The notes beneath the pieces were generated by a model. That model worked only from the letters and a program-made list of their open reading frames with translations, did no database searches and was not told the DNA's origin. From positions 1-41,236 of the IMG/VR virus record IMGVR_UViG_3300005573_000154: 41,236 bases of DNA; one strand, given 5' to 3'. Every line of letters begins with the position of its first letter. Within the stretch, counting starts at the first letter, position 1. Shown one piece after another: positions 1-33,178 of the stretch. Made by a program: the position numbers and the translations under genes.

Positions 1-392
1 TACACGTGTAAGCCTTTGTGTGGGCTTTTTTTGGCTATTGGGCTTGTTTTTGCGGGTTTTTTGTGTTTTGTGTGATGTGTGCGTATGGTGTGTTTTGTTG
101 TGCTTGTGTGTATGCTTTGGGGGGGTATAGGGTTTATGGTGATGCCTACATGTGTAGGCTTATTTGGGCTTAGTGTGATAAGTGTATGCGTGTGTATGTG
201 ATTGTGCTTGTAGTTGGTGAACAAGATGAGGAAACAATTAGAGAATGGGGCTATTGGGCTGATAATGGGGTTGAGAATAGGGTTCAGGCTAAGGCCATAA
301 AGCAAAGAGAGGATAGGGAAAAGCGTTAGGAATAGGGGGATTAAAGCATTAGGATAAAACAATAAGAGGGCTTAAAAAAATAAAGAAGATAG
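1..392 (+). repeat. Left inverted terminal repeat (392 bp)
   Basis: 1-392 is the reverse complement of 40845-41236, with the first mismatch at 393. It starts with the palindrome TACACGTGTA and is non-coding and G/T-rich. Confidence 0.97.
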
Positions 393-541
393 GGCTTTAA
401 TTGTTAAAGTAGATGGAGCTTTAAGCATTAAAGTAGGGGGGGCTTAAAGCATTAAAGTTTGGGGAACTTTAAGCATTAAAGTAGATGGAGCTTAAAACAT
501 TAAAGAAACACATAGAGAAAAGAGGACTTCAATTATTAAAG
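371..541. repeat. Cluster 1 of palindromic CTTTAA-N3-TTAAAG sites (7 copies)
   Basis: Copies start at 371, 395, 419, 443, 467, 491 and 527 (spacings 24 x5, then 36). Confidence 0.9.
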
Positions 542-2287: not shown

Positions 2288-2330
2288 ACCCCTTTTTCTT
2301 TTTTTCCGTTTTTTTCTTTTCCTCATTTTT
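2288..2330 (+). terminator. Oligo-T archaeal-type terminator
   Basis: CCCCTTTTTCTTTTTTTCCGTTTTTTTCTTTT directly after the stop codon. Similar C-then-T tracts follow other genes (about 6056, 7325, 8525, 23900). Confidence 0.6.
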
Positions 2331-2590
2331 GCTTTTTGGGCTTTAGCGTTTAGCGTTTTTTGGGATATTTGGCTTTTGGCTTATGGGGGGGCTTAAGGGG
2401 CTTTCTAGCTTTCCCGCAATTTTCTAGCACTTATTTGCGATAAGCCGGTCGAGCTTAGTCTAGGCTTTTGGATTTTTTTGCGGCTTATGCTTTTCGAGCT
2501 TCGAGCTTTTCGAGGCTTCGAGGCTTCAGGCTTTTCGAGCCAGTTGAGTTCGAGCTAGTTGGGGGGATGATGGGGGGCTGAAGTGTGGAG

Positions 2591-2917
2591 CTTTAAGAAT
2601 TAAAGTAGCGTATGTGCTGGATTGATGTTGGCACGGGGCTTTAATTGTTAAAGTAGCGTGTGTTGGGGGAATTCTAGCCTAGGGGGCTTAAAGCATTAAA
2701 GTAACTGATGCGGATAAGCCTGAGGATAATGGGGCTTTAATTGTTAAAGTTACTTCCACTTTGATCATTAAAGTTAGGCATGGGTTAGAGTTGTGCTATT
2801 GGGGGGCTTTGATTGTTAAAGTGGTCTGATGGGGGCATAGCATCCTACCCCGGGCTTTGATGATTAAAGAAACGCATATTGATTAGGCTGAGGATAATGG
2901 GGCTTTAATGCTTAAAG
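2591..2917. repeat. Cluster 2 of palindromic CTTTAA-N3-TTAAAG sites (8 copies)
   Basis: Copies start at 2591, 2639, 2687, 2735, 2759, 2807, 2855 and 2903 (spacings 48, 48, 48, 24, 48, 48, 48). Confidence 0.9.
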
Positions 2918-3114
2918 TAGCGCATATGTGTGTTGGCCTCGGTTGAGGAGCTGGCTTATAAGGCTTTGCCTCCCCCGCATTCTCGAGGCGAGCCTTAGAG
3001 AGATGGTTACATGTGTTTATATTTGTTGTCGTAATGCTTATATGGGTCTAGTGGTTTCTAGTCCCCTAAGGTTTATATTCTACACATGTATTGTTGCTTG
3101 TGAGGTGGTGCGGG

Positions 3115-3681
3115 ATGGTTGGTGGAAAGGTGCTTGTGTATGATCTTGTTTCGGAGAATCATCGAGCGTTAAGGAATACGCCTCTGTTTGGTAAAGTTCG
3201 AGCCGTCCGGATCAAGTGCACCAGCATGTTGTATAAGCTTGGCATACCTTGCACTGAGAGCGTTATACTGATAAACTCTAGCCATGCTGAGAGGATTAGT
3301 GAGACCATCGAGATGGTTAGGGAGCTTTATGAAGATGTTTTACATGAGGTTAATAATGCGCTAGGCGTAAGGCTTCCTGAGCCGGTTATTAAGGTGCTTG
3401 ATATAACTCAAGATCAGTATCAGGTTTTCCGAGATCTCGCTGAGAGAAGACTAAGGGAATCAATTGATGGCCAAATAGATAGAGTCTCGATGATTATCGA
3501 GACGGTTGCGGATCAGTCTGATCAAAATAAGAGGAGGAGCATTATACATAGCCTTAAGAAGCTTAAGAAGGAATGGGTTAGAATCAGAAATAGCTGTTTA
3601 GAAATTGGCATAAATCTCGAGGATGAGATTAACTATTTGCTTGATTTGATTGATCAGGCGATAAATGCGCTTTATAGCTGA
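3115..3681 (+). CDS. Hypothetical protein, possible Cas2/VapD-like ferredoxin N-terminal domain plus coiled coil
   Basis: ATG at 3115 after GAGGTG RBS and GGTTTATAT promoter. The pattern VLVYDL...LYKLGIPCTESVIL resembles the Cas2/VapD/PaaX-type 'vvYD...L...G...q.SV' motif. C-terminus is helical. Confidence 0.7.
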   Translation: MVGGKVLVYDLVSENHRALRNTPLFGKVRAVRIKCTSMLYKLGIPCTESVILINSSHAERISETIEMVRELYEDVLHEVNNALGVRLPEPVIKVLDITQDQYQVFRDLAERRLRESIDGQIDRVSMIIETVADQSDQNKRRSIIHSLKKLKKEWVRIRNSCLEIGINLEDEINYLLDLIDQAINALYS

Positions 3682-3698
3682 TTTCAGGAGGGGTCTTT

Positions 3699-5267
3699 AT
3701 GGAGCCGAGCTTTGGAATAGAGTTTGAATTTGATCTTATCCTGAAGAATGGCCGTAGGATTAGGGATGTTGCGCCACGTGCTAGGCGGTATGTTTATGGA
3801 TGGGATTATCAAGATGATCATACGTGTGCAGTAGAACTTAGGTCTCCCGTGTTCCGAGGTCTTGATCACGCTGTCAGCGAGATTGAGAGGCAGTTTAACT
3901 ATTGGTGTGATGTTTTCCAAGATGTTGCTCCATACCCGTATAGCGTTAATGGCCGAAGTCTAGGCATGCATATACATATTGGCTTACCCAATAGATGCCT
4001 ACACTATCACGAGGTTGATGTTGTTGGTAAGAGCGTCGCTAACGTTTATCCATTCCTAGCCGCTTTACAATGCCAGCCTGTTCCAAGCGAGAGGATACTC
4101 AGGAGCGCTTACCTCAGGCCATTATGGGCTTACGATTACGAAATAACTGACGATGACCATTATGCTGAGATTAATTTTAATGCCATTGGAACGGTTGAGT
4201 TTAGGATCTTTGACGCTAATGTTCCACAAGTTGCATTAACAAATGCGTGGATCATGCGGGAGATAGCTAAAGTTATGCTTGAGAATCAAAATTCAGATGT
4301 TGGTGTTAATCGAGAGAGATATAGGCATGATAGGAATATGGCGATTAGGTATGGCCTTAAAGCCCTAAATATTCTAAACTATTTGCAAATGATCAAAGAT
4401 ATGATAGGAAATGTTGCCATTCCTAGTTATCCATTTATCCGTGAGTTGCTATATCTTGCCGTGAAGTATCGCATGAATGCATGGGATATTATGAGAGCTG
4501 TAACGCAATCGCTTGGGACTAAAGAATTTGAATATTTCAGGGCTATGTTCAAGAATCCAAGAGACTTTATGTCTAATGTTATGTCGGTTATCAATAATTC
4601 TATGCATGATGTTGTTGATGAGCGATGTAAACAGATTATTTTAGATGCGCTTGAAAATTCTAGAAATCTAAATACTCTGGATGATCTGATTGCATTGGCT
4701 AGAACATTTGCGCCAGAAGTTCCCTCGATTTACGTGATACCGTTCCATTCAAAGAATCTACCGAGCCGAAGCTATGTTAAGAGGTGCATAGACCTGCACT
4801 ATTATCGTGTGTGTAGAATTAACGAGGTTGATAATACTCCATACGATGATGTAGCTAGTAGGATACATTACCTTATGAGGCATCACGGGGACGGATTTGT
4901 AAACGTGCTTAGCCCCGAGGATGTGATCAATAGGCCTGAGCGGTTCTATGTTTTCGTGGTGCCTGATCCGGATAATAGGCGTGAGGTTGTTCTAGGATGC
5001 ATAGCTGTCAGAATGTCCACAGGAGAGATTTCGAGCCTAGTTGTTGATAGGAGATATAGGCGCCTTGGAATCGCCAAGATTCTGATAAAAACCGTTATGC
5101 AAGTATTTGATCTGCATTATAGGAATTCATCGAGGCCGATTTTGCACGGATACGTTAAGAAGAAGAATGAGCCGATGATTAATTTGCTTAGAAGCATGGG
5201 CTTCGTGATTGAGCCGTTTAATCAGGATGTGTATAGGTTTAGGGTTGCTGTGAAGGAGAGTGATTAG
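3699..5267 (+). CDS. Putative amidoligase (glutamine-synthetase-like COOH-NH2 ligase) fused to a C-terminal GNAT acetyltransferase
   Basis: Ligase motifs FGIEFE, VELRSP, GMHIHIG and TVEFRIFD. C-terminal SSLVVDRRYRRLGIAKILI and NEPMINL match GNAT motifs A and B. Confidence 0.85.
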   Translation: MEPSFGIEFEFDLILKNGRRIRDVAPRARRYVYGWDYQDDHTCAVELRSPVFRGLDHAVSEIERQFNYWCDVFQDVAPYPYSVNGRSLGMHIHIGLPNRCLHYHEVDVVGKSVANVYPFLAALQCQPVPSERILRSAYLRPLWAYDYEITDDDHYAEINFNAIGTVEFRIFDANVPQVALTNAWIMREIAKVMLENQNSDVGVNRERYRHDRNMAIRYGLKALNILNYLQMIKDMIGNVAIPSYPFIRELLYLAVKYRMNAWDIMRAVTQSLGTKEFEYFRAMFKNPRDFMSNVMSVINNSMHDVVDERCKQIILDALENSRNLNTLDDLIALARTFAPEVPSIYVIPFHSKNLPSRSYVKRCIDLHYYRVCRINEVDNTPYDDVASRIHYLMRHHGDGFVNVLSPEDVINRPERFYVFVVPDPDNRREVVLGCIAVRMSTGEISSLVVDRRYRRLGIAKILIKTVMQVFDLHYRNSSRPILHGYVKKKNEPMINLLRSMGFVIEPFNQDVYRFRVAVKESD

Positions 5268-5269
5268 CC

Positions 5270-6052
5270 ATGTGCGGGATAGCCGGGGTTTATGGTGTTA
5301 ATGCGTTAAGGCTATCATTGATGATTACGTTGGCGCAAATTAACCGAGGCACTAGGGGGACTGGATTAGCGTGGATCAACCATAACAGGATTAAGGTGTT
5401 GAAGGAGCCGATTCATCCGGTTAAATTCTTCAAGAAGCATTATGATAGGCTTGAGTGGAAGGTTAAGGTTGCTGTTGCGCATAATAGACAGCCATCACGT
5501 GGAGGGGTTACGTATCAGAATACGCATCCATTTACAGACTGTAAGGGTAGATTCGCACTCGTTCATAATGGCTCTTGCATGTTCGATAATAACATAGTGT
5601 CTAAGATAAAGAGGGAGCATATGGTATTGGGAGAGACCGATAGCGAGATAATCACGCATCTTCTCGAGGATCTGTATGAGGAGCATGGAGACATGGTTAG
5701 CGCTATTGAGGCGCTATTTGATACGGATTTCTCTGGAGCTATTCTAGTGCTGACGAGAGACGGTAAAATCTATGGCGCTAGGGATGGCGTGATGCCACTA
5801 CACTACTGTAAGACTAATACACATGTCTTACTGGCATCAGAGGCCTCTGCGATTGAGGCGATACTAGACACGAACGCCAAGATTGAGGCATTGAAGATAC
5901 AGCAAATAATTGAGGTTGATGGCGGTAGGATAGAGATACACGGGGAAGGTATAGAGGAGGCGCCAGCACGTTATTATTATTATCCATATGCCTATGCATC
6001 AAGGCGGGCTAGCTCCCCCTATTATCCCTGGTATTATGATTGGGAAGACTGA
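5270..6052 (+). CDS. Class II (Ntn) glutamine amidotransferase
   Basis: N-terminal MCGIAG with catalytic Cys, plus NRG, HNR, NTHPF, HNG and TDSE motifs. Confidence 0.92.
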   Translation: MCGIAGVYGVNALRLSLMITLAQINRGTRGTGLAWINHNRIKVLKEPIHPVKFFKKHYDRLEWKVKVAVAHNRQPSRGGVTYQNTHPFTDCKGRFALVHNGSCMFDNNIVSKIKREHMVLGETDSEIITHLLEDLYEEHGDMVSAIEALFDTDFSGAILVLTRDGKIYGARDGVMPLHYCKTNTHVLLASEASAIEAILDTNAKIEALKIQQIIEVDGGRIEIHGEGIEEAPARYYYYPYAYASRRASSPYYPWYYDWED

Positions 6053-6142
6053 AGCCCCTTCTTTTTTTATTTTTTAGGTTTACACGTGTAGCTTTGCTTC
6101 TAGTGTATGGGTTTATGAGTAATTGAATATGTCCTAGGGGGG

Positions 6143-6289
6143 CTTAAAGAATTAAAGAAAAGCATAGAGATAAGGGAGCTTTAAGTATCAAAGTGACGGA
6201 TAGAATAAGCCGATAACAATATGGGGCTTTAAAAATTAAAGTAACGGATAGAATTGGGCTTATTGATGATGGGGCTTAAAGCATTAAAG
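6143..6289. repeat. Cluster 3 of palindromic CTTTAA-N3-TTAAAG sites (4 copies)
   Basis: Copies start at 6143, 6179, 6227 and 6275 (spacings 36, 48, 48). Confidence 0.9.
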
Positions 6290-6343
6290 TAACATGAGAG
6301 ATGAGCCATCTAGGGTAATACTCCTAAGGCTTATGTCATGTAT

Positions 6344-6362
6344 GGTTTATATGGTGCTTATG
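6344..6362 (+). promoter_or_regulatory. Conserved viral promoter GGTTTATATGGTGCTTATG
   Basis: TATA box plus conserved downstream element, about 45 nt before the ATG at 6390. Near-identical copies at 7496 and 8613. Confidence 0.75.
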
Positions 6363-14049: not shown

Positions 14050-14796
14050 TCACGGGTTCCACCTAACTTTTAAGAGGTCTTCCAGATGCTTGTATTTGCA
14101 GACTATGAAGTATTCATCGCTCCCGGCAAATAGTAGCCCAACCAGTTGATCGTTCTCGCTTGGCTGGTCTCCCTGCATCAGGAAGACCGGGCTTCCGCTG
14201 TCGCCTCCCTGTGATTGGCCTTTTACCACTATTTGATCCGTGAATACCACGTATTCGTCGTTATACCAGACTTTTACGGTTGCATTGTCATTTACTATTA
14301 CGCCTTCGGTGTATCCCGTAGTTCTCCCGCATTTCCATACCTTGCGGCCAACCACGCCATCCCCGGGGTGGGTTCCCTTTGGAAGTATGATTGATCCATC
14401 CTCCATGTAAACCCCTTTCGCTATGCTCCTATCATTGGATGATGGCTGGAATGTGGCCACAGCCGCATCTATGAGCCTGTATTCCTCTGAGCACCATTTT
14501 CTCAGTAGTTGGCCGAATATCATGCATATGTATGCCTTGAGTGTTGATGGCATTACTGGAACGTATCTCTTTAGTATTCCAACCCTATCATGCGGGTCTT
14601 TGCCCCCGTCATATGGGCCAGGCTGGACTATTGCCGTTTTTCCAGGGTCTCCTCGGAAGACGTGCCAGTTGCTTACCAGCACCTCCGTGTTGTCGGTTAT
14701 GTCTTGGAAGACGCCGGATAAAGTCCCGGCGGTAGTTTTTGTTGAGCCAATGCTGACTCCCCCCGCCAACACGCTTACCCGGCCCTTCCTGTCCAT
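14050..14796 (-). CDS. Chymotrypsin-like serine protease, catalytic domain
   Basis: GTL, SNWHV (His), IDAAVA (Asp), GRTTG and GGDSGSPV (Ser) motifs. Confidence 0.9.
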   Translation of the reverse strand: MDRKGRVSVLAGGVSIGSTKTTAGTLSGVFQDITDNTEVLVSNWHVFRGDPGKTAIVQPGPYDGGKDPHDRVGILKRYVPVMPSTLKAYICMIFGQLLRKWCSEEYRLIDAAVATFQPSSNDRSIAKGVYMEDGSIILPKGTHPGDGVVGRKVWKCGRTTGYTEGVIVNDNATVKVWYNDEYVVFTDQIVVKGQSQGGDSGSPVFLMQGDQPSENDQLVGLLFAGSDEYFIVCKYKHLEDLLKVRWNP

Positions 14797-17350: not shown

Positions 17351-18310
17351 TGCGAGCTGGAAAACTTAGTGAGCTGTATGATGTAGCGAGCTACTCTTAA
17401 CAGTGAGCTAGATAGATGAGCGAGCTTAGGAAGAGAGTGAGCTGGATTAGGAAGCGAGCTTGAGAATTAAGGGAGCTTAATGCCAGAGCGAGCTTCTTCT
17501 AAAAGTGAGCTGGAACACATAGCGAGCTGGAAAGAAAAGTGAGCTACGCACGAAAGCGAGCTGGACTGTGAAGTGAGCTAAGTCTTTGGGCGAGCTTAAA
17601 ATCGGAGTGAGCTACGGGTTCCAGCGAGCATACCCCTGAAGTGAGCAACCTATCTGAGCGAGCTGATTTTTTAAGTGAGCTATGAGGCATAGCGAGCTAA
17701 ATTGTCCAGTGAGCTGAAGAGAAGAGCGAGCTGGTGGGTGAAGTGAGCTACAATATTTAGCGAGCTTTTTCTGAAAGTGAGCTGGAACACGGAACGAGCT
17801 ACAAGACGGAGTGAACTGCATTGTGTAGCGAGCTAGGATGATGAGTGAGCTGTTCATTGAAGCGAGCTGAGGAATAAAGTGAGCTATCTACTCAAGCGAG
17901 CCACGATAATGAGTGAGCAACCCTCGGGAGCGAGCTGAATGGCTTAGTGAGCAAATAGGTATAGCGAGCTGAGACGATAAGTGAGCTGGGACATAAAGCG
18001 AGCTGAAATAAAAAGTGAGCTAAATAAAAAAGCGAGCTATGAAATCTAGTGAGCTGTGGATTGAAGCGAGCTGTGAGCTTGAGGGAGCTACCAATACAAG
18101 CGAGCTGGAATCGTGAGGAAGCTAGGGGGAATAGCGAGCTTAAAATCTGAGTGAGCTGGAGTCTATAGCGAGCTTTGAATAAAAGTGAGCTACCTCAAGA
18201 AGCGAGCTATATGAAAGAGTGAGCTGGAGGAATGAGCGAGCTGAAATAGAAAGTGAGCTACGCAATAAAGCGAGCTTGAGAAGAAAGTGAGCTATCCCGT
18301 CAAGCGAGCT
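17351..18310 (+). ncRNA. TIGR-type tandem interspaced guide RNA array: 28 units of 34 nt (AGCGAGCT-N9-AGTGAGCT-N9)
   Basis: 57 8-nt repeats at an exact 17-nt period from 17351 to 18303, alternating AGCGAGCT / AGTGAGCT with a few variants; 56 distinct 9-nt spacers; adjacent to the Nop/IS110-like gene. Confidence 0.92.
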
Positions 18311-23489: not shown

Positions 23490-23867
23490 ATGCCGCTCTA
23501 CCGAGACGGCATAATGATGTTCGAGAAGTATTCGAAGAAGTATAACCCGACGGTAATCGGCACCAGGTTCACGGATGTCCAGGCCACAGCGCTAGCGAGG
23601 GCTCAGGCAGGCCTCAACAAGGTTGACACCATCAGGTCAATGGTCAGGGACTACCTAGACTCCAAGGGGATCACGGGCGGCGTCAGGGCGCTCTACCTGG
23701 CGTTCGCCCTGAAGCTGTGGGCCCACGTTGAGAGGCAGGGAAACACCGCATCCAACAAGATTGCAGACGGCCTAATCGCCTACTTCAACAAGGCCTACGG
23801 GCTTGATACTACGCTACTCACCGACATCGCCAACGCAATCATCGTGAAGCCATCGGCTACACCGTAA
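23490..23867 (+). CDS. Major capsid protein, SIRV2/Adnaviria fold
   Basis: KYSKKYNPTV, GITGGVRALYLAFALKL and GLIAYFNKAYGLDTTLL match the SIRV2 MCP pattern (NPTV...GITGPNRAIYQGFGLKV...GLKGYYISAFNANPQVL). Strong RBS and terminator. Confidence 0.9.
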   Translation: MPLYRDGIMMFEKYSKKYNPTVIGTRFTDVQATALARAQAGLNKVDTIRSMVRDYLDSKGITGGVRALYLAFALKLWAHVERQGNTASNKIADGLIAYFNKAYGLDTTLLTDIANAIIVKPSATP

Positions 23868-23918
23868 AACAGCCAACCAGCTCACATCTTTTAAATTCCC
23901 CCTTTTTCTTTTTTTCTG

Positions 23919-25007
23919 ATGAACGGGAGACCGGTAGTATATTACATCTACCCAACCACGAAATGGGTCTCCTTCAGGATAATAGCCGAGGAACATATAA
24001 GACAGATACAAAAACAGTTTTACGTCCAGAAGGTTGATGAGACGGCCCTAGCAACAATACTACCGATAGCATCAATATCAGCCAAATCAGTCATATTCCT
24101 CCACCCATACTTCTATCCGATACAGGTCTATGAGAGGAGGCTTTTTTCAAGGATCGGAAAAATAGGCAACCTCATAGGGGTAGATGTTGCGGACACGGAT
24201 CATATGACAGAGATAGCCGTAAGGCTAACGGGATACGCAACAGCCATGATAGTCCCATCAAACTTCTCAGGGAAAACATATGTAGAGTCAGGGGTAAAGA
24301 CGCCAGTCCACGTGATTCCACATGGAGTCCACGAGTCATACATTGATGCAGAGCCATCAAAGCCCAACATATTCAAGGCCCTCCACGACTACAAGGCTAT
24401 GACGAAGAAGAAGCTGATGCAGATATGGGTCTTACACAGCTCATACCGCAAGGGCGAAGACCTCGCATACAAGATCTTCAACATACTCGTTAAAGAAAGG
24501 ATGGACGTAGCCCTAGTCGTCAGAAGACCACTAAGCATAGACCTATACGACTCCCCAATAAACCCCGAAAAGCTAACGCCAAAGATAACAATAGGCAAAT
24601 CATACCTCACGGATGAGGAGATAAAGGAGCTGATGGACATATGCGACATCTTCCTCCTAGCAAGCAGGGGAGGAGGCTTCGAACACCCACCCCTACTGGG
24701 AATGGCCAGGGGTGAGATAGTCATAGCGGCCAAGGGAGGAGCATGGGAGGACTACATGCCGGAATGGGGCCTAGTCCAATCACAGAAAAGCGAAACAGTC
24801 CTGCCCGGAAACCCGATACACGACGGCAGGGGAGTAGAAATGATAGCCGACAACGCAGTAGCAAAGATCTACGAAATACTAAACAACATGGACGAATACA
24901 AGGCGAAAATCAAAGAACACGTAGAAAAACACGTAAAACCAAACTTCACATGGGATAAAATAGGCCAAAAGCTCAGAGAGCTGACAGCAAGATATTTACA
25001 CATGTAG
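23919..25007 (+). CDS. GT-B (family 4) glycosyltransferase
   Basis: IVPS, VIPHG, RKGED and SRGGGFEHPPLLGMARG motifs; adjacent to the MCP as in rudiviruses. Confidence 0.9.
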   Translation: MNGRPVVYYIYPTTKWVSFRIIAEEHIRQIQKQFYVQKVDETALATILPIASISAKSVIFLHPYFYPIQVYERRLFSRIGKIGNLIGVDVADTDHMTEIAVRLTGYATAMIVPSNFSGKTYVESGVKTPVHVIPHGVHESYIDAEPSKPNIFKALHDYKAMTKKKLMQIWVLHSSYRKGEDLAYKIFNILVKERMDVALVVRRPLSIDLYDSPINPEKLTPKITIGKSYLTDEEIKELMDICDIFLLASRGGGFEHPPLLGMARGEIVIAAKGGAWEDYMPEWGLVQSQKSETVLPGNPIHDGRGVEMIADNAVAKIYEILNNMDEYKAKIKEHVEKHVKPNFTWDKIGQKLRELTARYLHM

Positions 25008-26642: not shown

Positions 26643-26918
26643 ATGGAGACCAAATCCATCCTCATCCCCCCAATTTTTATGCAGATAGACGGCGTCACGG
26701 TAGAGCTAGTTGAGGTCAGCAAGCACTTCCTAGCCCCAGACCAGCCATACTACATAGCCTCAGTAAAGATTATATACAAGGGGATACACAGCCGGGTCTT
26801 CCCAATCTTCGCAAAAGATATAACAGACCTGAAGAACAAGCTCAAGGTGGAAATAAACAAGGTGAAATTCATAGAATACTCATGCGGACTTGAGGAGGTG
26901 AAGAAGCTCATATGCTAG
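26643..26918 (+). CDS. Hypothetical protein
   Basis: GGGGTGA RBS; overlaps the start of the large gene. Confidence 0.75.
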   Translation: METKSILIPPIFMQIDGVTVELVEVSKHFLAPDQPYYIASVKIIYKGIHSRVFPIFAKDITDLKNKLKVEINKVKFIEYSCGLEEVKKLIC

Positions 26919-29900
26919 ACGATGAACCATTCCAGCTAACCCCAGAGGAAATAGAGGCCATAAGCAAGGCGGTAGCAGACGCAATAGCCCAAAACATACA
27001 AACCATCCAAAACACGATAACAAACAACCTACACGTGTATGAAATAATACCCGAAGACAAAATAGAAGAACTAATTGACCTAGACCTAATAGCATCATCA
27101 GTTCATGGCGTAACCGACATACTGGGACAGATCTCAGGCTGGTTCCAAAGCGTAATAGACAACGCAAGAAAACTCATAGTAAGCGGAATACAGGGGTTCA
27201 TAAATACATATGTAATGCCAGCGATAAACACCATAAAAGACTGGTTCTCTAAAACAGTTCCAGAAGTTGGAAGGGCCTTCGGCGACCTCGTAGGAATAAT
27301 ATCGGACAAGATCACGGCCCCATTAAGATCTGTAGCAAACTTCTTCACAGTAGATATACCAAACTACTTTAGAAAAGTAACCGACTTCTTTACAAAGGAT
27401 ATACCCAGCTTCTTCTCAAAGGTAGTAGATTTCTTCACGAGAGACCTACCCGGATACTTCAGCAAGGTAGCCGACTTCTTCACCAGAGAACTACCAAGCC
27501 GATTCAGCACAGTAATAGACTTCTTCACAAAGACGCTACCGCAACACTTCGGGTCAGTAATAGACTTCTTCACAAAAACACTCCCACAACACTTCGGCAT
27601 GGTAGCCGACTTCTTCACAAAGACAATGCCCCAATACTTTGGAACAGTAGTTAACTTTTTCACCAAAACCCTGCCAGACAACTTCAACATAGTAATAAAC
27701 TTCTTCACCAAAACAATTCCACAATACTTCGGCCTCGTAGCCGACTTTTTCACAAAGACAGTCCCACAATATTTTGGCATGGTAGCAGACTTCTTTACCA
27801 AGACAATTCCACAATACTTCGGCATGGTAACTGACTTCTTCACCAACACGGTGCCAAAATACTTTGGACTATTAGCTGACTTCTTTACCAAAACAGTCCC
27901 ACAATACTTTGGAATGGTGGATGATTTCTTCACTAAAACGGTTCCACAATACTTTGGGCTAGTCGTTGATTTCTTTACCAAGACAGTGCCACAATTCTTC
28001 AGCATGGTAATGGATTTCTTCACCAAAACAGTTCCACAATATTTTACCCTCGTAGCAGACTTCTTCACTAAGACGGTTCCGCAATATTTTGGAATGGTAG
28101 CCGACTTCTTTACTAAGATGGTTCCACAATATTTTGGCATGGTGGCGGACTTCTTCACTAAGACAATTCCACAATATTTTGGAATGGTAGCCGACTTCTT
28201 CACCAAAGCAGTTCCACAATACTTTGGAATGGTAGGCGCATTCTTCACCGAAACGTTGCCAAAATGGATAGAGGGAATGAGAAAAGGGGTTACAGACTTC
28301 ATAGACCTGTTAATGAAACTGCCATCAAGAGCGGCTGACATACTCATGACAGTTGGAAAATTCCTATTCGACACAATTATAGATCCCATGATAAAGGGAA
28401 TCAACACATACATCATAGCACCACTCGCAGGCGGCGTAGAAAGAATGTCAGGAATACTCAACAGCGTTGGAGCCGCATTCCAAGGATTCATGAACGCAAT
28501 CCTAAAATTCCCAGAATGGTTCCAGAGAAACCTAGTCGAACCATTCCTATCAGGACTAGGAAAAATAGGTGAATGGATCTGGAATGCACTGCCAGGATGG
28601 GTGAAAGATGCATTAAACGCAATCACGAACTTCTTCACCAAAGACTTGGTAAACTTCTTCACCAAAACCCTGCCAAGCTTCTTCGACACATTATCCAAAG
28701 GGTTCCAAGACTTCATAAAAGACCCACTTGGATGGTTCCAGAGAAACCTAGTTGAACCGCTAGTTGAAGGCCTAAACGCCATCGGGCAATGGATATGGAA
28801 CGCCCTCCCAGACTGGATGAAGAACGCAATAACAGCAATACAAGACTTCTTCACCAAGACAGTTCCAGAATTCTTCAGCTCAATTGCAAAAGGAATACAG
28901 GAATTCTTCAAAGACCCATTAGGATGGCTCAAAACACACCTAGTCGAACCAATAATCCAAGGATTCAATGCCCTGGGACAATGGATTTGGAACGCATTAC
29001 CGGATTGGCTCAAAGAAGGGCTAGAGGCAATAGGAAACGTATTCAAGGCAATAGCAGAAGGTGTAGTAAACTTCTTCAAAGACCCACTGAGAACAATCAT
29101 GAAAGGATTCGAAGCATTATGGAGCGGAATACAATGGCTGGGACAGAAAATCTGGGAAGGCCTACAATGGCTAGGCGGAATAATATTCAAGGGGCTGGTA
29201 ACCGCAGGAGAATGGCTATGGAACGCAATTAAGGGAGGGGTAGAATGGTTCATAAAGGCGCTAACAGACTTCGGGACAACAATCGTCAACACGATAACAG
29301 GCGCAGTAGTAGGGGGGCTAAAGGCAATAGGGGAATCGCTCATAAAAATGACCGTTGACTTCGTGGAATGGCTACTCGGAGCATCACAGAAATGCGCAAC
29401 ACATGTGGGCCCAGCAATAACCGACCTAGCCGTCGCATTAGTTAAGCCATTCGGAGTTATAGTTCCAACACAATTAGGTGCACCACTAGTAGCACTAGTT
29501 GACGAAGTCAAGCTCGCCAAGAACATCTCACAGTCCATAACATCCCTTGGCAAACTAATCGTGCTATGGGGTGGAACCATCGCAACCAGCCAAGCCCTCG
29601 CAACAGGAGCATGGGCGATACTGCACGGCATCGCAACGCCGCTGGACAAGGTGAGGATAGTAACACCATTCAAGATAAAGGCTAAGGCAAAAGGCAAGGG
29701 CAAGTTTCATCCGGCTGGAGTTGGCGCTGAGGGAGGAGCAGAGGGAGGCGCTGAGGCAGGAATATCTGTCCCACTAACGATAAACCTAGGACTATTCATA
29801 AGGCATATTGCCAGCGAGATAAGGAAACACGCCGACACAATAGGAAGATCACTTGCATATGGATTCGGCATATGGATAACCCAGCCGATGGTCAGGCTCG

Positions 29901-32900
29901 CAAGTAGCATATTCAGAAACATGCTAGTCGTTGAGCTACCAACACTAGAAATGATTACCGAATCCATGAGGAGACACATGCCACACGAAAAATTCAAGGA
30001 CATATTGAACAAGTCAAGAGAATACCTAGCCCTCTACGGATACAGCGACACCGTGATACAATGGCTCACCTCAACAGTAGATGAAGAGGGAATGGCAATA
30101 ACCATAACTGACAGATTTGGCAGACCAAGGAAGATCCCAGTATCATTAATGTATAACCTGCCGTCACCATCCGACGTTGCCAGAATGGTTATCAGAGATG
30201 TAATCATAAACATTGACGACCTGAAAAAGATGTTCATGATGAGAGGCATGAGCGAGGACATAGGCATCCTATACTACCTGCTACACTTCAGATACCCGCC
30301 ACCCGAAAGGCTATGGATATTCTACACCAGGGGAATAAGCGGGCTACTATGGGCTAGAATATCAGGAACAGAAGCTAGAGACGTTGAAAGGGATGTTAAG
30401 GCATCTGGAGGATTCCTGCCAAGATCACCAGAAGAACTCAACTTTGAAGCATCAACGTTAGAGAACCTACTAAAGACATACCTAAAGTGGCATGATTTTG
30501 CGAGGTTTGCATATGCAGAAGGATGGCCATCAGACAACCTCATAGTAATGGATACACTTGCAGACATACCGACGAAGATTGATCAGAGATGGCTCGTTAG
30601 GTTTGGGCTATACCAGCTACTGAGCGAGAGGGGAGTCGGATATAAATCAGCCGTAAGCGAATTCTGTGAAAAGGTTGTAGAAAGCGCATCAAAAGGAAAG
30701 GTAATATTAGACCTAACCAACTTCTGCCGGACGCTACAAGCGACAGGCCTGCACCCATACTGGGTTCCAATAACTGCGGTAGCTGAGACGATAAACGCCA
30801 TAACGGATGAGAGAACGCTCCTGAGAACCGGCGTAATGAGCCTATATAAGGAGGGATTCCTCGACAGCTCCGCTGTATCAAGGCTTGGCCAGGGGATAGT
30901 GATGACATCATTCAACGTGGCATACTTTGACCCAGTATCAAACACGTGGAAGACCGGATACATAAACGTCCCGCTAAGATACCTTGGAATGGAGGCCCAG
31001 CTAATAGGCCTAAGGGCCATAATGGACAGGGCCCTAGACATCCTAAGAGACATACAGAGAGATGCACTAACAGCATACCAGGAATTCATAATAACGGATG
31101 AAAGCGAATTCAAGTCAAAGCTATCAAACATAATAAACAGCATAAACTCAATCTACGAACAGGAATACACCAAGATAATCGGAGAATCGCCGCCAGAGGA
31201 TCTAAAGCTCAAATACGTTGAAAGCTACTACTCAGCATACCTCAAATCCCTAGAGATTTGGAGAGAGGTATTCACCACAAGAAGGATCAGGATGTGGACT
31301 CAGAGATGGCTAGGATGGGTCATGTATAGGGCCGCATACGGAACAGTAACAAAGGAAGACATACAGAAACTCGTATCACTAATGGGAGACTACGCAAAGC
31401 TAACCGAAAAAGAAGTCCAATTCATACAAGAAGTCCTAAACATAATGTATGGCATGGCAAGGAGGGAGGTGGCGGCTGAATACCTGCCAACGCCATCAAC
31501 AATGGCCACGCTAAGCGAATACCTGACACTAGACACAGGCCTAGTCAAGAAAATACTAACGGAGAGGGGAATACCAGAAGAATGGCAGAACATATGGCTG
31601 AGATACATATCGGTAAAGCCGATCAAATCAGATGCAAAATCACTGCTATCAGCACATGTAAGAGCATTCAGATACGGGGCAATAACAAGGGAAGCCCTAG
31701 ACGCATTCATATCAACCCTGCCACAATACGGCTTCACGGATAAGGAGATAGACATCGTAAGGAGAATCGCAGAACTGGAGGAGATGATACTTGAAGCCCG
31801 TGAAAACAGGCGTGAATACATACCAACACCATCAATGCTGGCAACACTATCAGAGTATGTAGCCCTAGACCCAAGCATGATTCAAAAGGTATTTGATGCC
31901 AGAAATGTTCCACCAGAATGGAGGGCAATATGGTCTCAATACATATCAGTCAGGCCGATAGCGGATGATGTTAAGGCATTGCTATCAACATACAGGCGTG
32001 TATTACTATACGTCAAGATACCCGACGAAATAGCCAAACAGGTGCTAGAATACGCCAAGCTGATAGGGTTTACTGACAGAGAGCTAGCAATACTAGACCT
32101 GAGAAACAGGCTAGAGGAAATGCTCATAGAATACAGGGAGAACAGGAGAGAATACATACCAACACCATCAATGCTTGCAACAATGTCAGAATACATGACA
32201 ATACCAGCAGATCTAATACAAAAGGTGTTCGAAGCAAGGCATGTTCCACCTGAATGGCAGACAATATGGATGCAGTATATCAACATCAGGCCGATAGTTG
32301 ATGATGTAAGAGGCTTATTATCCTCATACCGGAGAGCCCTGATATACGTCACGCTACCGGATGACATAAAGAAGAAGGTGGAATCCTACGCCAACACAAT
32401 AGGCTTCACCCAGACGGAATGGGACATACTGACACTAAGAGTAACCCTTGAGGAACTGATACTAGAGGCCAGGGAGAATAGGCGTGAATACATACCAACA
32501 CCAATGACATTGGCAACACTATGCGAATACCTCCCAGAGGCCAGAGAGTTCTTTGACGACGTCGTAAAGGCTAGGAGGATACCAACTGAATGGCAGAAGC
32601 TATGGGCCAAATACATAGACCTCAGGCCGCTTATTGACGACATAAAGAGATACCTGTCAAGGGCAGAACAACTATACGTCAGATTCATGATAAAGAAGGA
32701 CGACTTCATGAAGGTTCTAAACGAGGTTGCCAAGAACCTAGGATACACGACAACCGAGGTTGACTTCCTGCTAAAGGTAACAGAATTCGAGAGATACGCC
32801 AACGCATGGAGAGAGCTAATAGGAACCGTTGACAGGCTAGTAGAGCTCAGCGAATATAGCCCAAGAGCATCAAAATACGCCCTAGGAAAGGTCTATGAGA

Positions 32901-33178
32901 TGATAGACGCCCTCCCACTCCCACAGGCAGACAAACAGGAGCTAAAGGCCATGTGGGAGGAATACATCAAGAATAGGCCGGTCAAATCAGAGGCAAGGCT
33001 ATACATCACACAGCTATCAAACGCCTATGCAGAAGGCCTGATAAGCGATGCGGACTTCTCCAGAGAACTAGAATCAATGAAGCAATGGGGATTCTCCGAC
33101 AACGAGATAATGTTCTATAAAGCAAGGGCCGCACTCATGAAGGCAAGAAAGCTCAAGCTACCGCTAATGTGGGAGTAG
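26912..33178 (+). CDS. Large (2088 aa) repeat-rich structural protein, probably terminal structure/fibre
   Basis: 21 x 15-aa repeats (VADFFTKTVPQYFGM), Trp-rich amphipathic repeats, and four 112-aa C-terminal repeats (EYIPTPSMLATLSEY). Confidence 0.8.
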   Translation: MLDDEPFQLTPEEIEAISKAVADAIAQNIQTIQNTITNNLHVYEIIPEDKIEELIDLDLIASSVHGVTDILGQISGWFQSVIDNARKLIVSGIQGFINTYVMPAINTIKDWFSKTVPEVGRAFGDLVGIISDKITAPLRSVANFFTVDIPNYFRKVTDFFTKDIPSFFSKVVDFFTRDLPGYFSKVADFFTRELPSRFSTVIDFFTKTLPQHFGSVIDFFTKTLPQHFGMVADFFTKTMPQYFGTVVNFFTKTLPDNFNIVINFFTKTIPQYFGLVADFFTKTVPQYFGMVADFFTKTIPQYFGMVTDFFTNTVPKYFGLLADFFTKTVPQYFGMVDDFFTKTVPQYFGLVVDFFTKTVPQFFSMVMDFFTKTVPQYFTLVADFFTKTVPQYFGMVADFFTKMVPQYFGMVADFFTKTIPQYFGMVADFFTKAVPQYFGMVGAFFTETLPKWIEGMRKGVTDFIDLLMKLPSRAADILMTVGKFLFDTIIDPMIKGINTYIIAPLAGGVERMSGILNSVGAAFQGFMNAILKFPEWFQRNLVEPFLSGLGKIGEWIWNALPGWVKDALNAITNFFTKDLVNFFTKTLPSFFDTLSKGFQDFIKDPLGWFQRNLVEPLVEGLNAIGQWIWNALPDWMKNAITAIQDFFTKTVPEFFSSIAKGIQEFFKDPLGWLKTHLVEPIIQGFNALGQWIWNALPDWLKEGLEAIGNVFKAIAEGVVNFFKDPLRTIMKGFEALWSGIQWLGQKIWEGLQWLGGIIFKGLVTAGEWLWNAIKGGVEWFIKALTDFGTTIVNTITGAVVGGLKAIGESLIKMTVDFVEWLLGASQKCATHVGPAITDLAVALVKPFGVIVPTQLGAPLVALVDEVKLAKNISQSITSLGKLIVLWGGTIATSQALATGAWAILHGIATPLDKVRIVTPFKIKAKAKGKGKFHPAGVGAEGGAEGGAEAGISVPLTINLGLFIRHIASEIRKHADTIGRSLAYGFGIWITQPMVRLASSIFRNMLVVELPTLEMITESMRRHMPHEKFKDILNKSREYLALYGYSDTVIQWLTSTVDEEGMAITITDRFGRPRKIPVSLMYNLPSPSDVARMVIRDVIINIDDLKKMFMMRGMSEDIGILYYLLHFRYPPPERLWIFYTRGISGLLWARISGTEARDVERDVKASGGFLPRSPEELNFEASTLENLLKTYLKWHDFARFAYAEGWPSDNLIVMDTLADIPTKIDQRWLVRFGLYQLLSERGVGYKSAVSEFCEKVVESASKGKVILDLTNFCRTLQATGLHPYWVPITAVAETINAITDERTLLRTGVMSLYKEGFLDSSAVSRLGQGIVMTSFNVAYFDPVSNTWKTGYINVPLRYLGMEAQLIGLRAIMDRALDILRDIQRDALTAYQEFIITDESEFKSKLSNIINSINSIYEQEYTKIIGESPPEDLKLKYVESYYSAYLKSLEIWREVFTTRRIRMWTQRWLGWVMYRAAYGTVTKEDIQKLVSLMGDYAKLTEKEVQFIQEVLNIMYGMARREVAAEYLPTPSTMATLSEYLTLDTGLVKKILTERGIPEEWQNIWLRYISVKPIKSDAKSLLSAHVRAFRYGAITREALDAFISTLPQYGFTDKEIDIVRRIAELEEMILEARENRREYIPTPSMLATLSEYVALDPSMIQKVFDARNVPPEWRAIWSQYISVRPIADDVKALLSTYRRVLLYVKIPDEIAKQVLEYAKLIGFTDRELAILDLRNRLEEMLIEYRENRREYIPTPSMLATMSEYMTIPADLIQKVFEARHVPPEWQTIWMQYINIRPIVDDVRGLLSSYRRALIYVTLPDDIKKKVESYANTIGFTQTEWDILTLRVTLEELILEARENRREYIPTPMTLATLCEYLPEAREFFDDVVKARRIPTEWQKLWAKYIDLRPLIDDIKRYLSRAEQLYVRFMIKKDDFMKVLNEVAKNLGYTTTEVDFLLKVTEFERYANAWRELIGTVDRLVELSEYSPRASKYALGKVYEMIDALPLPQADKQELKAMWEEYIKNRPVKSEARLYITQLSNAYAEGLISDADFSRELESMKQWGFSDNEIMFYKARAALMKARKLKLPLMWE
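27332..28276 (+). repeat. 45-bp (15-aa) coding tandem repeat, 21 copies
   Basis: GACTTCTTCACCAA-type units every 45 nt. Confidence 0.9.

What the first reader, a model, noticed from the sequence alone, without database searches (positions are those of the whole stretch)
3699..6052. Amidoligase-GNAT fusion plus glutamine amidotransferase: a modification cassette in an archaeal virus
Seen: adjacent genes for a GS-like COOH-NH2 ligase fused to an acetyltransferase and an Ntn glutaminase, behind one promoter with the 3115 gene and flanked by palindrome clusters. Established: amidoligase plus class II GATase neighbourhoods occur in bacteria and some phages and are proposed to amidate or peptide-tag substrates. 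Inference: sequential amidation and acetylation of a host surface glycan, a protein or a signalling metabolite, perhaps for superinfection exclusion or counter-defence.
Basis: partly seen in the sequence, partly recalled or inferred. Interest (0 to 1): 0.6.

Follow-up and report, generated by a model that had tools for sequence, protein, structure and literature searches.

The report
Viral ligase-acetyltransferase plus glutaminase operon
A filamentous hot-spring archaeal virus carries a conserved three-gene operon for an ATP-dependent carboxylate-amine ligase fused to an acetyltransferase, a stand-alone glutamine-splitting enzyme and a small partner protein; the domains are real and always travel together, but what they modify is still unknown.

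Summary
ORF 3699-5267 encodes a 522-aa fusion. Residues 1-285 are a YbdK/GCS2-type glutamine-synthetase-fold carboxylate-amine ligase (model pLDDT 92.8; Z 23.2 to 1tt4) with all metal/ATP motifs invariant. Residues 365-522 are a GNAT nearest archaeal protein acetyltransferases. ORF 5270-6052 is a stand-alone class II (Ntn) glutaminase with Cys2, closest to the GlmS/PurF glutaminase domains.

The ligase-then-glutaminase gene order held in all nine related loci examined, including distant ones without a GNAT. A third gene (3115-3681, weakly Cas2/PaaX-like fold) accompanies the GNAT-bearing versions. One TATA-like box, internal ribosome-binding sites and a T-tract terminator fit a single operon. 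Arrays of a palindromic motif bracket it.

The genome is a complete 41.2-kb linear virus with 392-bp inverted terminal repeats and a filamentous-archaeal-virus coat protein, found in hot springs.

The ligase family is small, almost wholly metagenomic and viral-like, and is not captured by Pfam. It is a sister of GCS2 and of the phage Amidoligase_2 family.

Most likely mechanism (inferred): a two-subunit glutamine-dependent amidotransferase with a coupled acetyltransferase. The substrate is unknown. This is a new variant of the known, still uncharacterised, phage amidoligase-GATase theme.

The parts
2589..2917 (.). Array of about 8 copies of the palindromic motif GGGGCTTTAAnnnTTAAAGTA at 48-bp spacing, upstream of the operon promoter
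   Evidence: 29 matches in the window against 0.65 expected, in three clusters only; sequence
3070..3078 (+). TATA-like promoter box GGTTTATAT, 37 bp before the ATG at 3115; GAGGTGG ribosome site at 3102-3108
   Evidence: 6 copies against 0.46 expected, each before an ORF start; the same box sits before the homologous operon in L002; sequence
3115..3681 (+). Gene 1: 188-aa protein with a ferredoxin-like N-terminal domain (weakly Cas2/VapD/PaaX/ChrB_N-like) and a C-terminal three-helix bundle; invariant CTESV motif; function unknown
   Evidence: 45 homologues; trio context in L002, L005/6, L009 and L014; model pLDDT 93.6; Foldseek top hits are Cas2 but at E >= 0.13; Atlas neighbours ChrB_N/PaaX_M at TM 0.5-0.6
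3699..4568 (+). Gene 2, residues 1-290: GS/GCL-fold carboxylate-amine ligase domain (YbdK/GCS2-like). Invariant residues E8, E10, D40, E46, H91, H93, E157, E167, R169, D172, N174
   Evidence: motif alignment with YbdK; Z 23.2 to 1tt4; Z 19.6 to plant GCL
4569..4790 (+). Gene 2, residues 291-364: helical linker region with no assigned fold
   Evidence: Secondary structure; barely covered by any structural match
4791..5267 (+). Gene 2, residues 365-522 plus stop: GNAT acetyltransferase domain. Acetyl-CoA motif R454-R-L-G-I-A459 is conserved; the usual Tyr general-acid position is Phe or Leu
   Evidence: archaeal Ard1/Pat, Naa10, RimI; Z about 16
5270..5959 (+). Gene 3, residues 1-230: class II (Ntn) glutaminase domain. 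Invariant C2, R26, R73, N100-G101, D124; no synthase domain
   Evidence: invariant columns; GlmS/PurF glutaminase domains, E 5e-19 over residues 1-239
5960..6052 (+). Gene 3, residues 231-260 plus stop: Tyr/Trp-rich, poorly conserved C-terminal tail
6060..6075 (+). T-tract (TCTTTTTTTATTTTTT) directly after the stop codon; likely archaeal terminator
   Evidence: Sequence; interpretation from general knowledge of archaeal oligo-T termination
6141..6289 (.). Second array (4 copies) of the same palindromic motif, upstream of the next promoter box at 6344-6352

Best explanation
The three genes 3115-6052 form one operon of a hot-spring filamentous archaeal virus. They encode a small-substrate or protein-modifying enzyme set. 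SHOWN: gene 2 is a GCS2/YbdK-type ATP-dependent carboxylate-amine ligase with an intact active-site signature, fused to a GNAT with an intact acetyl-CoA motif. Gene 3 is a catalytically intact GlmS/PurF-type glutaminase that lacks any acceptor domain. The ligase-then-glutaminase pair is inherited as a unit across very divergent viruses. INFERRED: the two proteins work as a two-subunit glutamine-dependent amidotransferase. The glutaminase splits glutamine. The ligase phosphorylates a carboxylate with ATP, and the ammonia released turns the acyl-phosphate into a carboxamide. The fused GNAT then N-acetylates an amine of the same substrate or product, giving a charge-neutralised (acetylated and amidated) amino acid, peptide or protein terminus. 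Gene 1 is a regulatory or scaffolding subunit tied to the GNAT-bearing versions. Because the operon is an accessory unit near the genome end, its role is probably host takeover or inter-virus/host conflict rather than virion building. The substrate is not known.
For: Domain identities. Invariant ligase residues E8/E10, E46, H91/H93, E167/R169 across 79 sequences, and across the wider set, align with the GIELE, GQHVHVG and GTVEVR motifs of YbdK. Glutaminase invariants are C2, R26, R73, N100-G101 and D124. Its best matches are the glutaminase domains of true amidotransferases, over its whole core; YafJ-like 1te5 matches only partly and no EgtC chain is listed. It has no acceptor domain of its own, so it needs a partner. 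Linkage: the glutaminase gene lies directly downstream of the ligase in L002, L003/4, L005/6, L007, L008, L009, L010, L014 and the NCBI contig of P0073. Identities of the two proteins fall together: ligase 50, 44, 38, 32, 30, 26 % against glutaminase 61, 53, 44, 44, 31, 31 %. Operon signals. Accessory, end-proximal position: 3-6 kb from the left repeat here; 4-7 kb, 1-4 kb and under 3 kb from contig ends in L002, L005 and L014. A known pathway uses the same three chemistries from a fused bifunctional enzyme plus an adjacent class II amidotransferase, namely N-acetylglutaminylglutamine amide synthesis by Ngg/AsnO (own knowledge, Sagot et al. 2010). This shows that such a product logic exists.
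Against: No experiment exists for this family or for the related phage cassettes. The complex prediction for ligase plus glutaminase gave no verdict, so there is no support for a physical complex or an ammonia channel. No GS/GCL-fold enzyme is known experimentally to take ammonia from a GATase partner. Class II 'GATases' can instead be gamma-glutamyl amidohydrolases, such as EgtC working alongside the GCS2-type ligase EgtA. The GNAT lacks the usual Tyr general acid (Phe/Leu). It is truncated or replaced in part of the family (P0020-22, P0074-81; only 19 of 46 wider representatives show a GNAT). Acetylation is therefore not essential to the core function and need not act on the same substrate.
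Confidence: 0.45

Rival explanations
1. Gamma-glutamyl conjugation cycle, like EgtA/EgtC or PuuA/PuuD. The GCS2-like ligase joins glutamate (or another acid) to an organic amine such as a polyamine, cysteine or an amino sugar. The Ntn protein is not an ammonia donor but an amidohydrolase that makes glutamate locally or later removes the gamma-glutamyl group. The GNAT acetylates the amine substrate, as SpeG does with polyamines.
For: The nearest families by sequence, features and structure are GCS2/YbdK glutamate-cysteine-type ligases, whose known members join an amino acid to glutamate rather than ammonia. Pfam's best model for the glutaminase is the YafJ-type GATase_4. SpeG polyamine acetyltransferases appear among the GNAT fold matches. 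The EgtA (GCS2-type) with EgtC (class II GATase-like) precedent comes from own knowledge.
Against: Over its full length the glutaminase matches GlmS/PurF glutaminase domains far better than YafJ-like proteins, and no EgtC model or chain was hit. The GNAT is closer to protein acetyltransferases (Ard1, Pat, RimI) than to SpeG by sequence.
Confidence: 0.2
2. Protein or peptide modification. The GNAT is a protein N-terminal or lysine acetyltransferase taken from the host. The ligase modifies a protein carboxylate, either amidating a C-terminus or acidic side chain or attaching an amino acid or tag as PafA does. Targets would be viral structural proteins or host chromatin or defence proteins.
For: The best sequence and profile matches of the GNAT are archaeal and eukaryotic protein acetyltransferases: Sulfolobus Pat 3f8k, Ard1 SSO0209, Naa10, RimI. 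PafA and Dop, which are protein-modifying GS-fold enzymes, are structural neighbours of the ligase domain at Z 15-16. Gene 1 has an invariant CTESV motif and could be a substrate or carrier.
Against: YbdK and GCL-type small-molecule ligases score clearly higher than PafA/Dop (Z 23.2 and 19.6 against 15-16). No Pup-like small protein gene was recognised in the operon. GNAT substrate class cannot be read from nearest neighbours.
Confidence: 0.15
3. Post-replicative hypermodification of viral DNA bases. The ligase and glutaminase amidate, and the GNAT acetylates, an amino-acid-derived side chain on a pyrimidine, as proposed for amidoligase and amidotransferase genes seen next to thymidine-hypermodification genes in phage metagenomes.
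For: PMC8989533 reports amidoligase and glutamine amidotransferase genes co-associated with 5-hmdU kinase and amino-acid:DNA transferase genes, and a GNAT that acetylates 5-aminomethyl-dU in DNA.
Against: A Pfam scan of 62 further ORFs of this complete genome found no thymidylate-synthase-like hydroxymethylase, TET/JBP, P-loop 5-hmdU kinase or aGPT-Pplase family. It found only a SAM methyltransferase, HTH/RHH regulators, an Mrr-like nuclease fold, a glycosyltransferase and the coat protein.
Confidence: 0.05
4. Modification of a host surface glycan or virion glycan (uronic acid to uronamide, plus N-acetylation) for superinfection exclusion.
For: Amidated and acetylated sugars exist in archaeal N-glycans (own knowledge). 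The genome has a GT1-type glycosyltransferase next to the coat protein gene.
Against: The glycosyltransferase is 18 kb away in a different module. There are no sugar-nucleotide enzymes in the operon or the window. Known sugar amidotransferases are asparagine-synthetase-like, not GS-fold (own knowledge).
Confidence: 0.07

Closest known systems
YbdK / GCS2 family carboxylate-amine ligases (Pfam PF04107; PDB 1r8g, 1tt4)
   Same: Same fold over about 276 residues (Z 23.2, rmsd 3.1 A). The GxExE, E, GQHxHxG and TxExR motifs align. Nearest Atlas clusters by features and structure, TM 0.72, include Thermoproteota members.
   Different: P0001 does not reach any Pfam GCS2 score; only 7 of 35 family members hit it at E<1, best 0.005. 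About 28 residues are deleted after the HxH strand. The family has its own invariant PSxRG, D40 and D172-x-N174 positions. It is fused to a GNAT and always followed by a glutaminase gene.
Phage amidoligase-GATase cassette (phiEco32 / LUZ24 / PaP3 type; Pfam Amidoligase_2 PF12224 and COOH-NH2_lig PF14395; Iyer et al. 2009)
   Same: A virus-borne GS-fold ligase next to a class II GATase in an early or accessory region; function uncharacterised in both. The glutaminase profile matches LUZ24 gp19 at hhalign E 2e-10. The weak tail of the family search is made of Amidoligase_2 proteins, 31 of 57.
   Different: LUZ24 has two separate GS-fold ligases, a 510-aa GATase, an ATP-grasp enzyme and a gamma-glutamyl cyclotransferase, and no GNAT. 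Here there is one ligase fused to a GNAT, a 260-aa glutaminase and a Cas2-like-fold protein, and no ATP-grasp or cyclotransferase family anywhere in the genome. Ligase-to-ligase similarity is marginal: hhalign E 0.013 to gp18 and 0.0027 to gp16. The host domain (Archaea) and virus type (filamentous) also differ.
Ngg / AsnO pathway for N-acetylglutaminylglutamine amide (own knowledge, Sagot et al. 2010)
   Same: A bifunctional GNAT-plus-ATP-dependent-ligase fusion encoded next to a class II glutamine amidotransferase; the product is both N-acetylated and amidated.
   Different: Ngg's ligase is an ATP-grasp fold, not a GS fold. AsnO carries its own asparagine-synthetase domain, whereas the glutaminase here has none. 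There is no sequence relationship beyond the generic GNAT and GATase domains (the TIGR03104 hit at E 0.001 is generic).
EgtA / EgtC of ergothioneine synthesis, and PafA / Dop of pupylation
   Same: GS/GCL-fold ligases that work with a class II GATase-like amidohydrolase (EgtC) or a homologous deamidase (Dop). Dop and PafA are structural neighbours at Z 15-16.
   Different: No EgtB, EgtD, EgtE or Pup-like genes are present. The glutaminase resembles GlmS/PurF rather than EgtC. The ligase resembles YbdK more than PafA.

Membership tests
GS/GCL-fold carboxylate-amine ligase superfamily | Characteristic fold of the catalytic domain | tested here: met
   AlphaFold model pLDDT 92.8. VIA-align Z 23.2 (1tt4), 19.6 (plant GCL), 13-14 (glutamine synthetases). 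Foldseek YbdK E 2.9e-8.
GS/GCL-fold carboxylate-amine ligase superfamily | Acidic and His metal/ATP ligands and the E-x-R phosphate-binding motif | tested here: met
   E8, E10, E46, H91, H93, E157, E167 and R169 are invariant in 26-35 divergent sequences and aligned to the YbdK motifs. E, E, D, E, H, H, E and R are also invariant in the 46 wider representatives.
GS/GCL-fold carboxylate-amine ligase superfamily | ATP-dependent ligation via an acyl-phosphate | not testable with these tools
   Needs an enzyme assay.
Pfam GCS2 (PF04107) | Score above the family's gathering threshold | tested here: not met
   No hit for P0001 at E<=1. 7 of 35 relatives hit at E<1, best 0.0048. 1 of 46 wider representatives hit at E<=0.001.
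Pfam Amidoligase_2 (PF12224) | Score above the family's gathering threshold | tested here: not met
   No hit for P0001. 13 of 35 relatives hit at E<1, best 9.2e-5. hhalign to LUZ24 gp18 gives E 0.013, probability 3%.
GNAT acetyltransferases | Pfam score above threshold, and the fold | tested here: met
   Acetyltransf_1 at 35.9 bits against 20.7. Z about 16 to Ard1, RimI and NAT structures over residues 365-522.
GNAT acetyltransferases | Acetyl-CoA pyrophosphate-binding motif A (R/Q-x-x-G-x-G/A) | tested here: met
   R454-R-L-G457-I-A459, with G in 72 of 79 and A/G in 69 of 79 sequences.
GNAT acetyltransferases | Catalytic general-acid Tyr in motif B (as in RimI and the NATs) | tested here: inconclusive
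   The corresponding position 497 is Phe (38), Leu (19) and never Tyr. The alignment to RimI is by motif from own knowledge, and many active GNATs lack this Tyr.
Class II (Ntn) glutamine amidotransferase | N-terminal nucleophile Cys directly after Met1 | tested here: met
   MCG start, with C2 invariant in 7 of 7.
Class II (Ntn) glutamine amidotransferase | Glutamine-binding Arg and Asp and the Asn-Gly oxyanion hole | tested here: met
   R26, R73, N100-G101 and D124 are invariant and aligned to GlmS. Residue roles are from own knowledge of GlmS.
Class II (Ntn) glutamine amidotransferase | Covalently attached synthase (acceptor) domain | tested here: not met
   The protein is 260 aa. Only the glutaminase domain plus a 30-aa aromatic tail is present, so an acceptor must be supplied in trans.
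Phage amidoligase-GATase cassette (LUZ24/phiEco32 type) | Amidoligase_2 plus COOH-NH2_lig plus GATase, commonly with an ATP-grasp enzyme and a gamma-glutamyl cyclotransferase | tested here: not met
   Only the ligase-next-to-GATase core is shared. No ATP-grasp, GGCT or second ligase family was found among 62 other ORFs. Compare the LUZ24 annotation.
Thymidine hypermodification gene clusters | 5-hmdU source, 5-hmdU DNA kinase and aGPT-Pplase transferase in the genome | tested here: not met
   None appears among the Pfam families hit by the window's ORFs. Caveat: distant versions could escape Pfam.
Two-subunit glutamine amidotransferase (functional class) | Physical complex with an ammonia channel between glutaminase and synthase | tested here: inconclusive
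   Complex prediction scored 0.00, reported by the tool as no verdict. It needs biochemistry or a structure.

The most novel reading that the evidence does not exclude
The pair is the first glutamine amidotransferase whose acceptor (synthase) subunit has a glutamine-synthetase/GCL fold. Filamentous archaeal viruses would use it, with the fused acetyltransferase, to make or to neutralise a small charged molecule or a protein terminus of the host, as a weapon in virus-host or virus-virus conflict. Examples of a target are a polyamine, an amino-acid-derived signal, or a defence or chromatin protein. This would be a rare enzymatic takeover module in a group of viruses whose genes are almost all of unknown function.
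Probability: 0.2. Interest if true: 0.8.

Novelty: new variant of a known kind. Interest (0 to 1): 0.55.

Why it matters
Genomes of crenarchaeal filamentous viruses consist almost entirely of genes without recognisable function, so a conserved operon of three recognisable catalytic domains is one of the few direct handles on what these viruses do to their hosts.

The wider theme, a GS-fold ligase next to a class II glutaminase in viruses, has been noted in phage genomes since 2009. It is repeatedly annotated as an 'auxiliary metabolic gene', yet it has never been characterised. The compact archaeal version has two proteins, thermostable, with an added GNAT. It may be the easiest member to work out biochemically.

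If the glutaminase really feeds ammonia to a GS/GCL-fold ligase, that adds a new synthase fold to the amidotransferase repertoire.

Tried and rejected
1. megablast of the region and tblastn of P0001 against 50,697 phage and archaeal-virus records found no match. tblastn of P0002 found only distant GlmS-like genes of bacterial phages. No cultured virus carries the cassette.

2. Two IMG/VR scans, one with the protein and one with the alignment, found no confirmed relatives. The tool may leave out near relatives of the window.

3. Complex prediction for ligase-GNAT plus glutaminase scored 0.00, which the tool reports as 'no verdict'. It is not used as evidence either way.

4. The PADLOC defence-system models gave nothing.

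5. Gene 1 (P0003) has no significant hit in Pfam, NCBIfam or PHROGs. The PDB fold search gave only generic three-helix bundles and sub-threshold Cas2/VapD/PaaX matches. The Cas2-like reading is a lead, not a finding.

6. The Iyer et al. 2009 paper (PMC3268129) is not held. Its content is cited only through papers that quote it and from my own memory.

7. The DNA-hypermodification idea was considered after and set aside, because the companion enzymes are absent.

8. The flanking palindromes were considered as borders of a mobile element and rejected. The same motif also forms an array at 369-541. Each of the three arrays lies upstream of a GGTTTATAT box. Relatives carry a different repeat in the same place.

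9. tblastn of two candidate coat genes found nothing. The coat gene was then located with the Pfam model.

10. No RNA runs hold the region, so expression could not be checked.
Full report
WHAT THE WINDOW IS

The window is a whole virus record of 41,236 bp with perfect 392-bp inverted terminal repeats.

One ORF (23490-23867) matches the coat protein family of filamentous Sulfolobus viruses, Sulf_coat_C, at E 6e-20, above the curated cut-off. A GT1-type glycosyltransferase lies next to it. Most other ORFs match nothing. The rest are a SAM methyltransferase, HTH/RHH regulators and an Mrr-like nuclease fold.

Near-identical DNA is held in hot-spring metagenomes of 13 studies. Named relatives of the proteins come from Ignisphaera and Thermoproteota bins. 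'Archaeal virus' is therefore correct: a filamentous, Ligamenvirales-like virus of a hyperthermophilic host.

THE OBSERVATION

The C-terminal part of the first ORF is a GNAT:
- Pfam Acetyltransf_1 scores 35.9 bits against a cut-off of 20.7.
- The best solved relatives are the archaeal protein acetyltransferases Pat and Ard1, then Naa10 and RimI.

The second ORF is a class II glutamine amidotransferase domain that begins Met-Cys. It matches Pfam GATase_4, _6 and _7, and the GlmS N-terminal half at E 1.4e-25.

The ligase domain is not seen by Pfam in this protein. The evidence for it is as follows:
- NCBIfam gives only weak YbdK-family hits, E 1.5e-4.
- A search for homologues found 78 proteins, with E down to 1e-174.
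- Their alignment shows invariant E8, E10, D40, E46, H91, H93, E157, E167, R169, D172 and N174.
- A profile of the first 290 residues matches E. coli YbdK at E 1.3e-6. GIEFEF pairs with GIELEM, GQHIHIG with GQHVHVG, and GTVEFRIFD with GTVEVRVMD.
- An AlphaFold model built on the 79-sequence alignment is confident, with mean pLDDT 92.8.
- Residues 1-285 of that model superpose on the YbdK-type protein 1tt4 at Z 23.2 (rmsd 3.1 A, 276 residues). They superpose on plant glutamate-cysteine ligase at Z 19.6, on Dop and PafA at Z 15-16, and on glutamine synthetases at Z 13-14.
- Residues 365-522 superpose on Ard1, RimI and NAT acetyltransferases at Z about 16.

OPERON SIGNALS

- A box GGTTTATAT lies at 3070-3078, 37 bp before the ATG at 3115. 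It occurs six times in the genome against 0.46 expected, each time before an ORF start. It also stands before the homologous operon of a relative that is only 45-60 % identical in protein.
- The three genes are separated by 17 and 2 bp, with GGAGG-like ribosome sites and no further box.
- A T-tract follows the last stop codon.

I take the three genes as one transcription unit. This is inferred from sequence, because no RNA data exist.

PALINDROME CLUSTERS

The motif GGCTTTRAnnnTTAAAG has 29 matches against 0.65 expected. All fall in three arrays: 369-541 (24-bp period), 2589-2917 (48-bp period) and 6141-6289. Each array lies upstream of one GGTTTATAT box, at 776, 3070 and 6344.

A relative has a different repeated word (GACGAGCT) in the corresponding place. 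I therefore read the arrays as upstream control regions of successive left-arm operons, not as borders of a mobile cassette.

LINKAGE TO THE GLUTAMINASE

Every context I could fetch has a 244-303-aa GATase_4/6/7 gene directly after the ligase gene. Nine independent loci show this:
- L002, a 39.5-kb contig.
- L003/L004.
- L005/L006.
- L007 and L008, whose ligases are only 26-30 % identical and lack a GNAT.
- The NCBI contig of P0073.
- L009 and L010, from binned genomes.
- L014.

Identities of the two proteins fall in parallel across these loci, as expected for a unit inherited together. Three still more distant ligase-like loci (L011-L013, 25-30 % identity over part of the domain) show no glutaminase within 6 kb. 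They probably belong to neighbouring families.

THE THIRD GENE

The gene at 3115-3681 has 45 homologues. It sits directly upstream of the ligase in L002, L005/6, L009 and L014, and in rearranged form in L003. These are the GNAT-bearing versions. It is absent before the GNAT-less ligases of L007 and L008.

Its model (pLDDT 93.6) has a ferredoxin-like N-terminal domain and a three-helix bundle. The nearest structures are Cas2, VapD and PaaX, but at E >= 0.13. Atlas neighbours are ChrB_N/PaaX_M clusters at TM 0.5-0.6. Its function stays open.

SIZE AND PLACE OF THE FAMILY

- An exhaustive profile search of 1.84 billion cluster representatives found only 150 proteins at E <= 0.001 and 68 at E <= 1e-30.
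- Of 46 further strong representatives, 19 show a GNAT and almost none reach Pfam GCS2 or Amidoligase_2.
- The weak tail consists of Amidoligase_2 (31 of 57) and GCS2 (17 of 57) proteins.
- The Atlas places the domain nearest to GCS2 clusters (TM 0.72), then to the phage COOH-NH2_lig and Amidoligase_2 families.
- Only five loci were found among the contigs of 185,579 species-representative genomes. All five are contigs of metagenome-assembled bins. The three that carry the glutaminase or the whole trio (L009, L010) are short contigs of 4-9 kb.

The family is thus a small, essentially viral, unnamed sister of GCS2/YbdK and of the phage amidoligases.

WHAT IS KNOWN ELSEWHERE

Phage genome papers repeatedly list an amidoligase and a glutamine amidotransferase as neighbours. 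They cite Iyer et al. 2009 for proposed roles in metabolite synthesis, cell-wall modification or superinfection immunity. Examples are LUZ24-like phages, OM43 phages and a tailed virus of marine Poseidoniales archaea. None reports an experiment.

In LUZ24 the cassette holds two GS-fold ligases, a 510-aa GATase, an ATP-grasp enzyme and a gamma-glutamyl cyclotransferase. Similarity of my family to these ligases is marginal. The glutaminases are clearly related.

No paper in the library describes such genes in filamentous crenarchaeal viruses.

MECHANISM

Shown: an intact GS/GCL-type active-site signature, an intact acetyl-CoA motif, an intact glutaminase triad of features, no acceptor domain on the glutaminase, and strict gene linkage.

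The glutaminase is most like those of GlmS and PurF, which are true amidotransferases, over its whole core. It is like YafJ-type proteins only in part.

From this I infer that the ligase is the missing acceptor subunit. ATP activates a carboxylate as an acyl-phosphate, and ammonia from glutamine makes the amide. The GNAT acetylates an amine of the same molecule. The Ngg/AsnO pathway to N-acetylglutaminylglutamine amide (own knowledge) shows that nature makes such doubly capped products from a fused ligase-acetyltransferase and an adjacent class II amidotransferase. I put this at 0.45.

Points against:
- The complex prediction gave no verdict.
- No GS-fold enzyme is known to use a GATase partner.
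- The GNAT lacks the usual Tyr general acid (Phe or Leu).
- The GNAT is dispensable in parts of the family.

Rivals:
- A gamma-glutamyl conjugation cycle of the EgtA/EgtC or polyamine type (0.2).
- Protein or peptide modification (0.15).
- Glycan modification (0.07).
- DNA base hypermodification (0.05). The last was raised by PMC8989533, but the companion enzymes are absent.

The operon lies 3-6 kb from the genome end here, and similarly close to contig ends in three relatives.

Contigs from two other hot-spring samples hint at relatives in which the operon is replaced or skipped. The joints are 3017 to 6344 and 2330 to 6154. Each rests on one contig with a short side of 20-23 letters, so the evidence is weak. 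This fits an accessory, conflict-related role but does not prove it.

VERDICT

The finding is real and well read. The kind of system is known from phages but has not been characterised. This is a distinct, compact, GNAT-fused variant in a new virus group, with a third conserved partner. Novelty: new variant of a known kind. Interest: 0.55.

Noticed in passing
window 369-541, 2589-2917, 6141-6289: Three arrays of the palindromic motif GGCTTTRAnnnTTAAAG (periods 24, 48 and 36/48 bp), 29 matches against 0.65 expected. Each array lies upstream of a GGTTTATAT promoter-like box (776, 3070, 6344). They are probably binding-site arrays for a viral regulator. Relatives carry a different repeat word (GACGAGCT in L002 3800-3950) at the same place.
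   Followed up: partly
window 17501-18310: Dense 17-bp-period repeats of AGCGAGCT / AGTGAGCT in a mostly non-coding stretch near the middle of the genome. Possibly a replication origin or another regulator array. The word resembles the GACGAGCT repeats of L002.
   Followed up: no
window 26912-33178 (repeat at 27503-28254): A 2088-aa ORF without any family match holds about 17 tandem copies of a 45-bp (15-aa) unit. It is probably a terminal fibre or structural protein.
   Followed up: no
window 23490-25007: Coat protein gene (Sulf_coat_C, E 6e-20) directly followed by a GT1 glycosyltransferase (phrog_2170, E 2e-40). This identifies the virus as a filamentous archaeal virus.
   Followed up: partly
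window 5960-6049 and the homologous tails in L002, L003, L005, L014: The glutaminases end in poorly conserved tails of about 30 residues, very rich in Tyr and Trp (for example YYYYPYAY...PYYPWYYDWED). Possibly a docking peptide for the ligase; not tested.
   Followed up: no
L003 5130-5986: The homologue of gene 1 is split. Its first 47 residues are encoded on the opposite strand (5270-5130) and the rest on the + strand (5519-5986), which suggests a local inversion or rearrangement.
   Followed up: no
window 3017-6344 and 2330-6154 (runs X3, X4): Single metagenome contigs from other hot springs join the flanks and skip the operon (3326 and 3823 bases; sides of only 20-23 letters). In X4 the right flank is several-fold deeper than the operon. 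This hints that relatives lack or replace the cassette, but the evidence is weak.
   Followed up: partly
L008 708-5887: The most distant GNAT-less ligase-glutaminase pair sits next to a family B DNA polymerase and an AAA/clamp-loader-like gene. The pair therefore also occurs in a quite different, replication-competent virus type.
   Followed up: no
window 14050-14796 (- strand): A 248-aa ORF matches a PHROG annotated as protease (phrog_20754, E 2e-27). In the pooled Pfam scan of the window's ORFs, which does not say which ORF matched, Nal1_C (a serine-protease-like domain) was hit at E 2.3e-8; it may or may not be this ORF.
   Followed up: no
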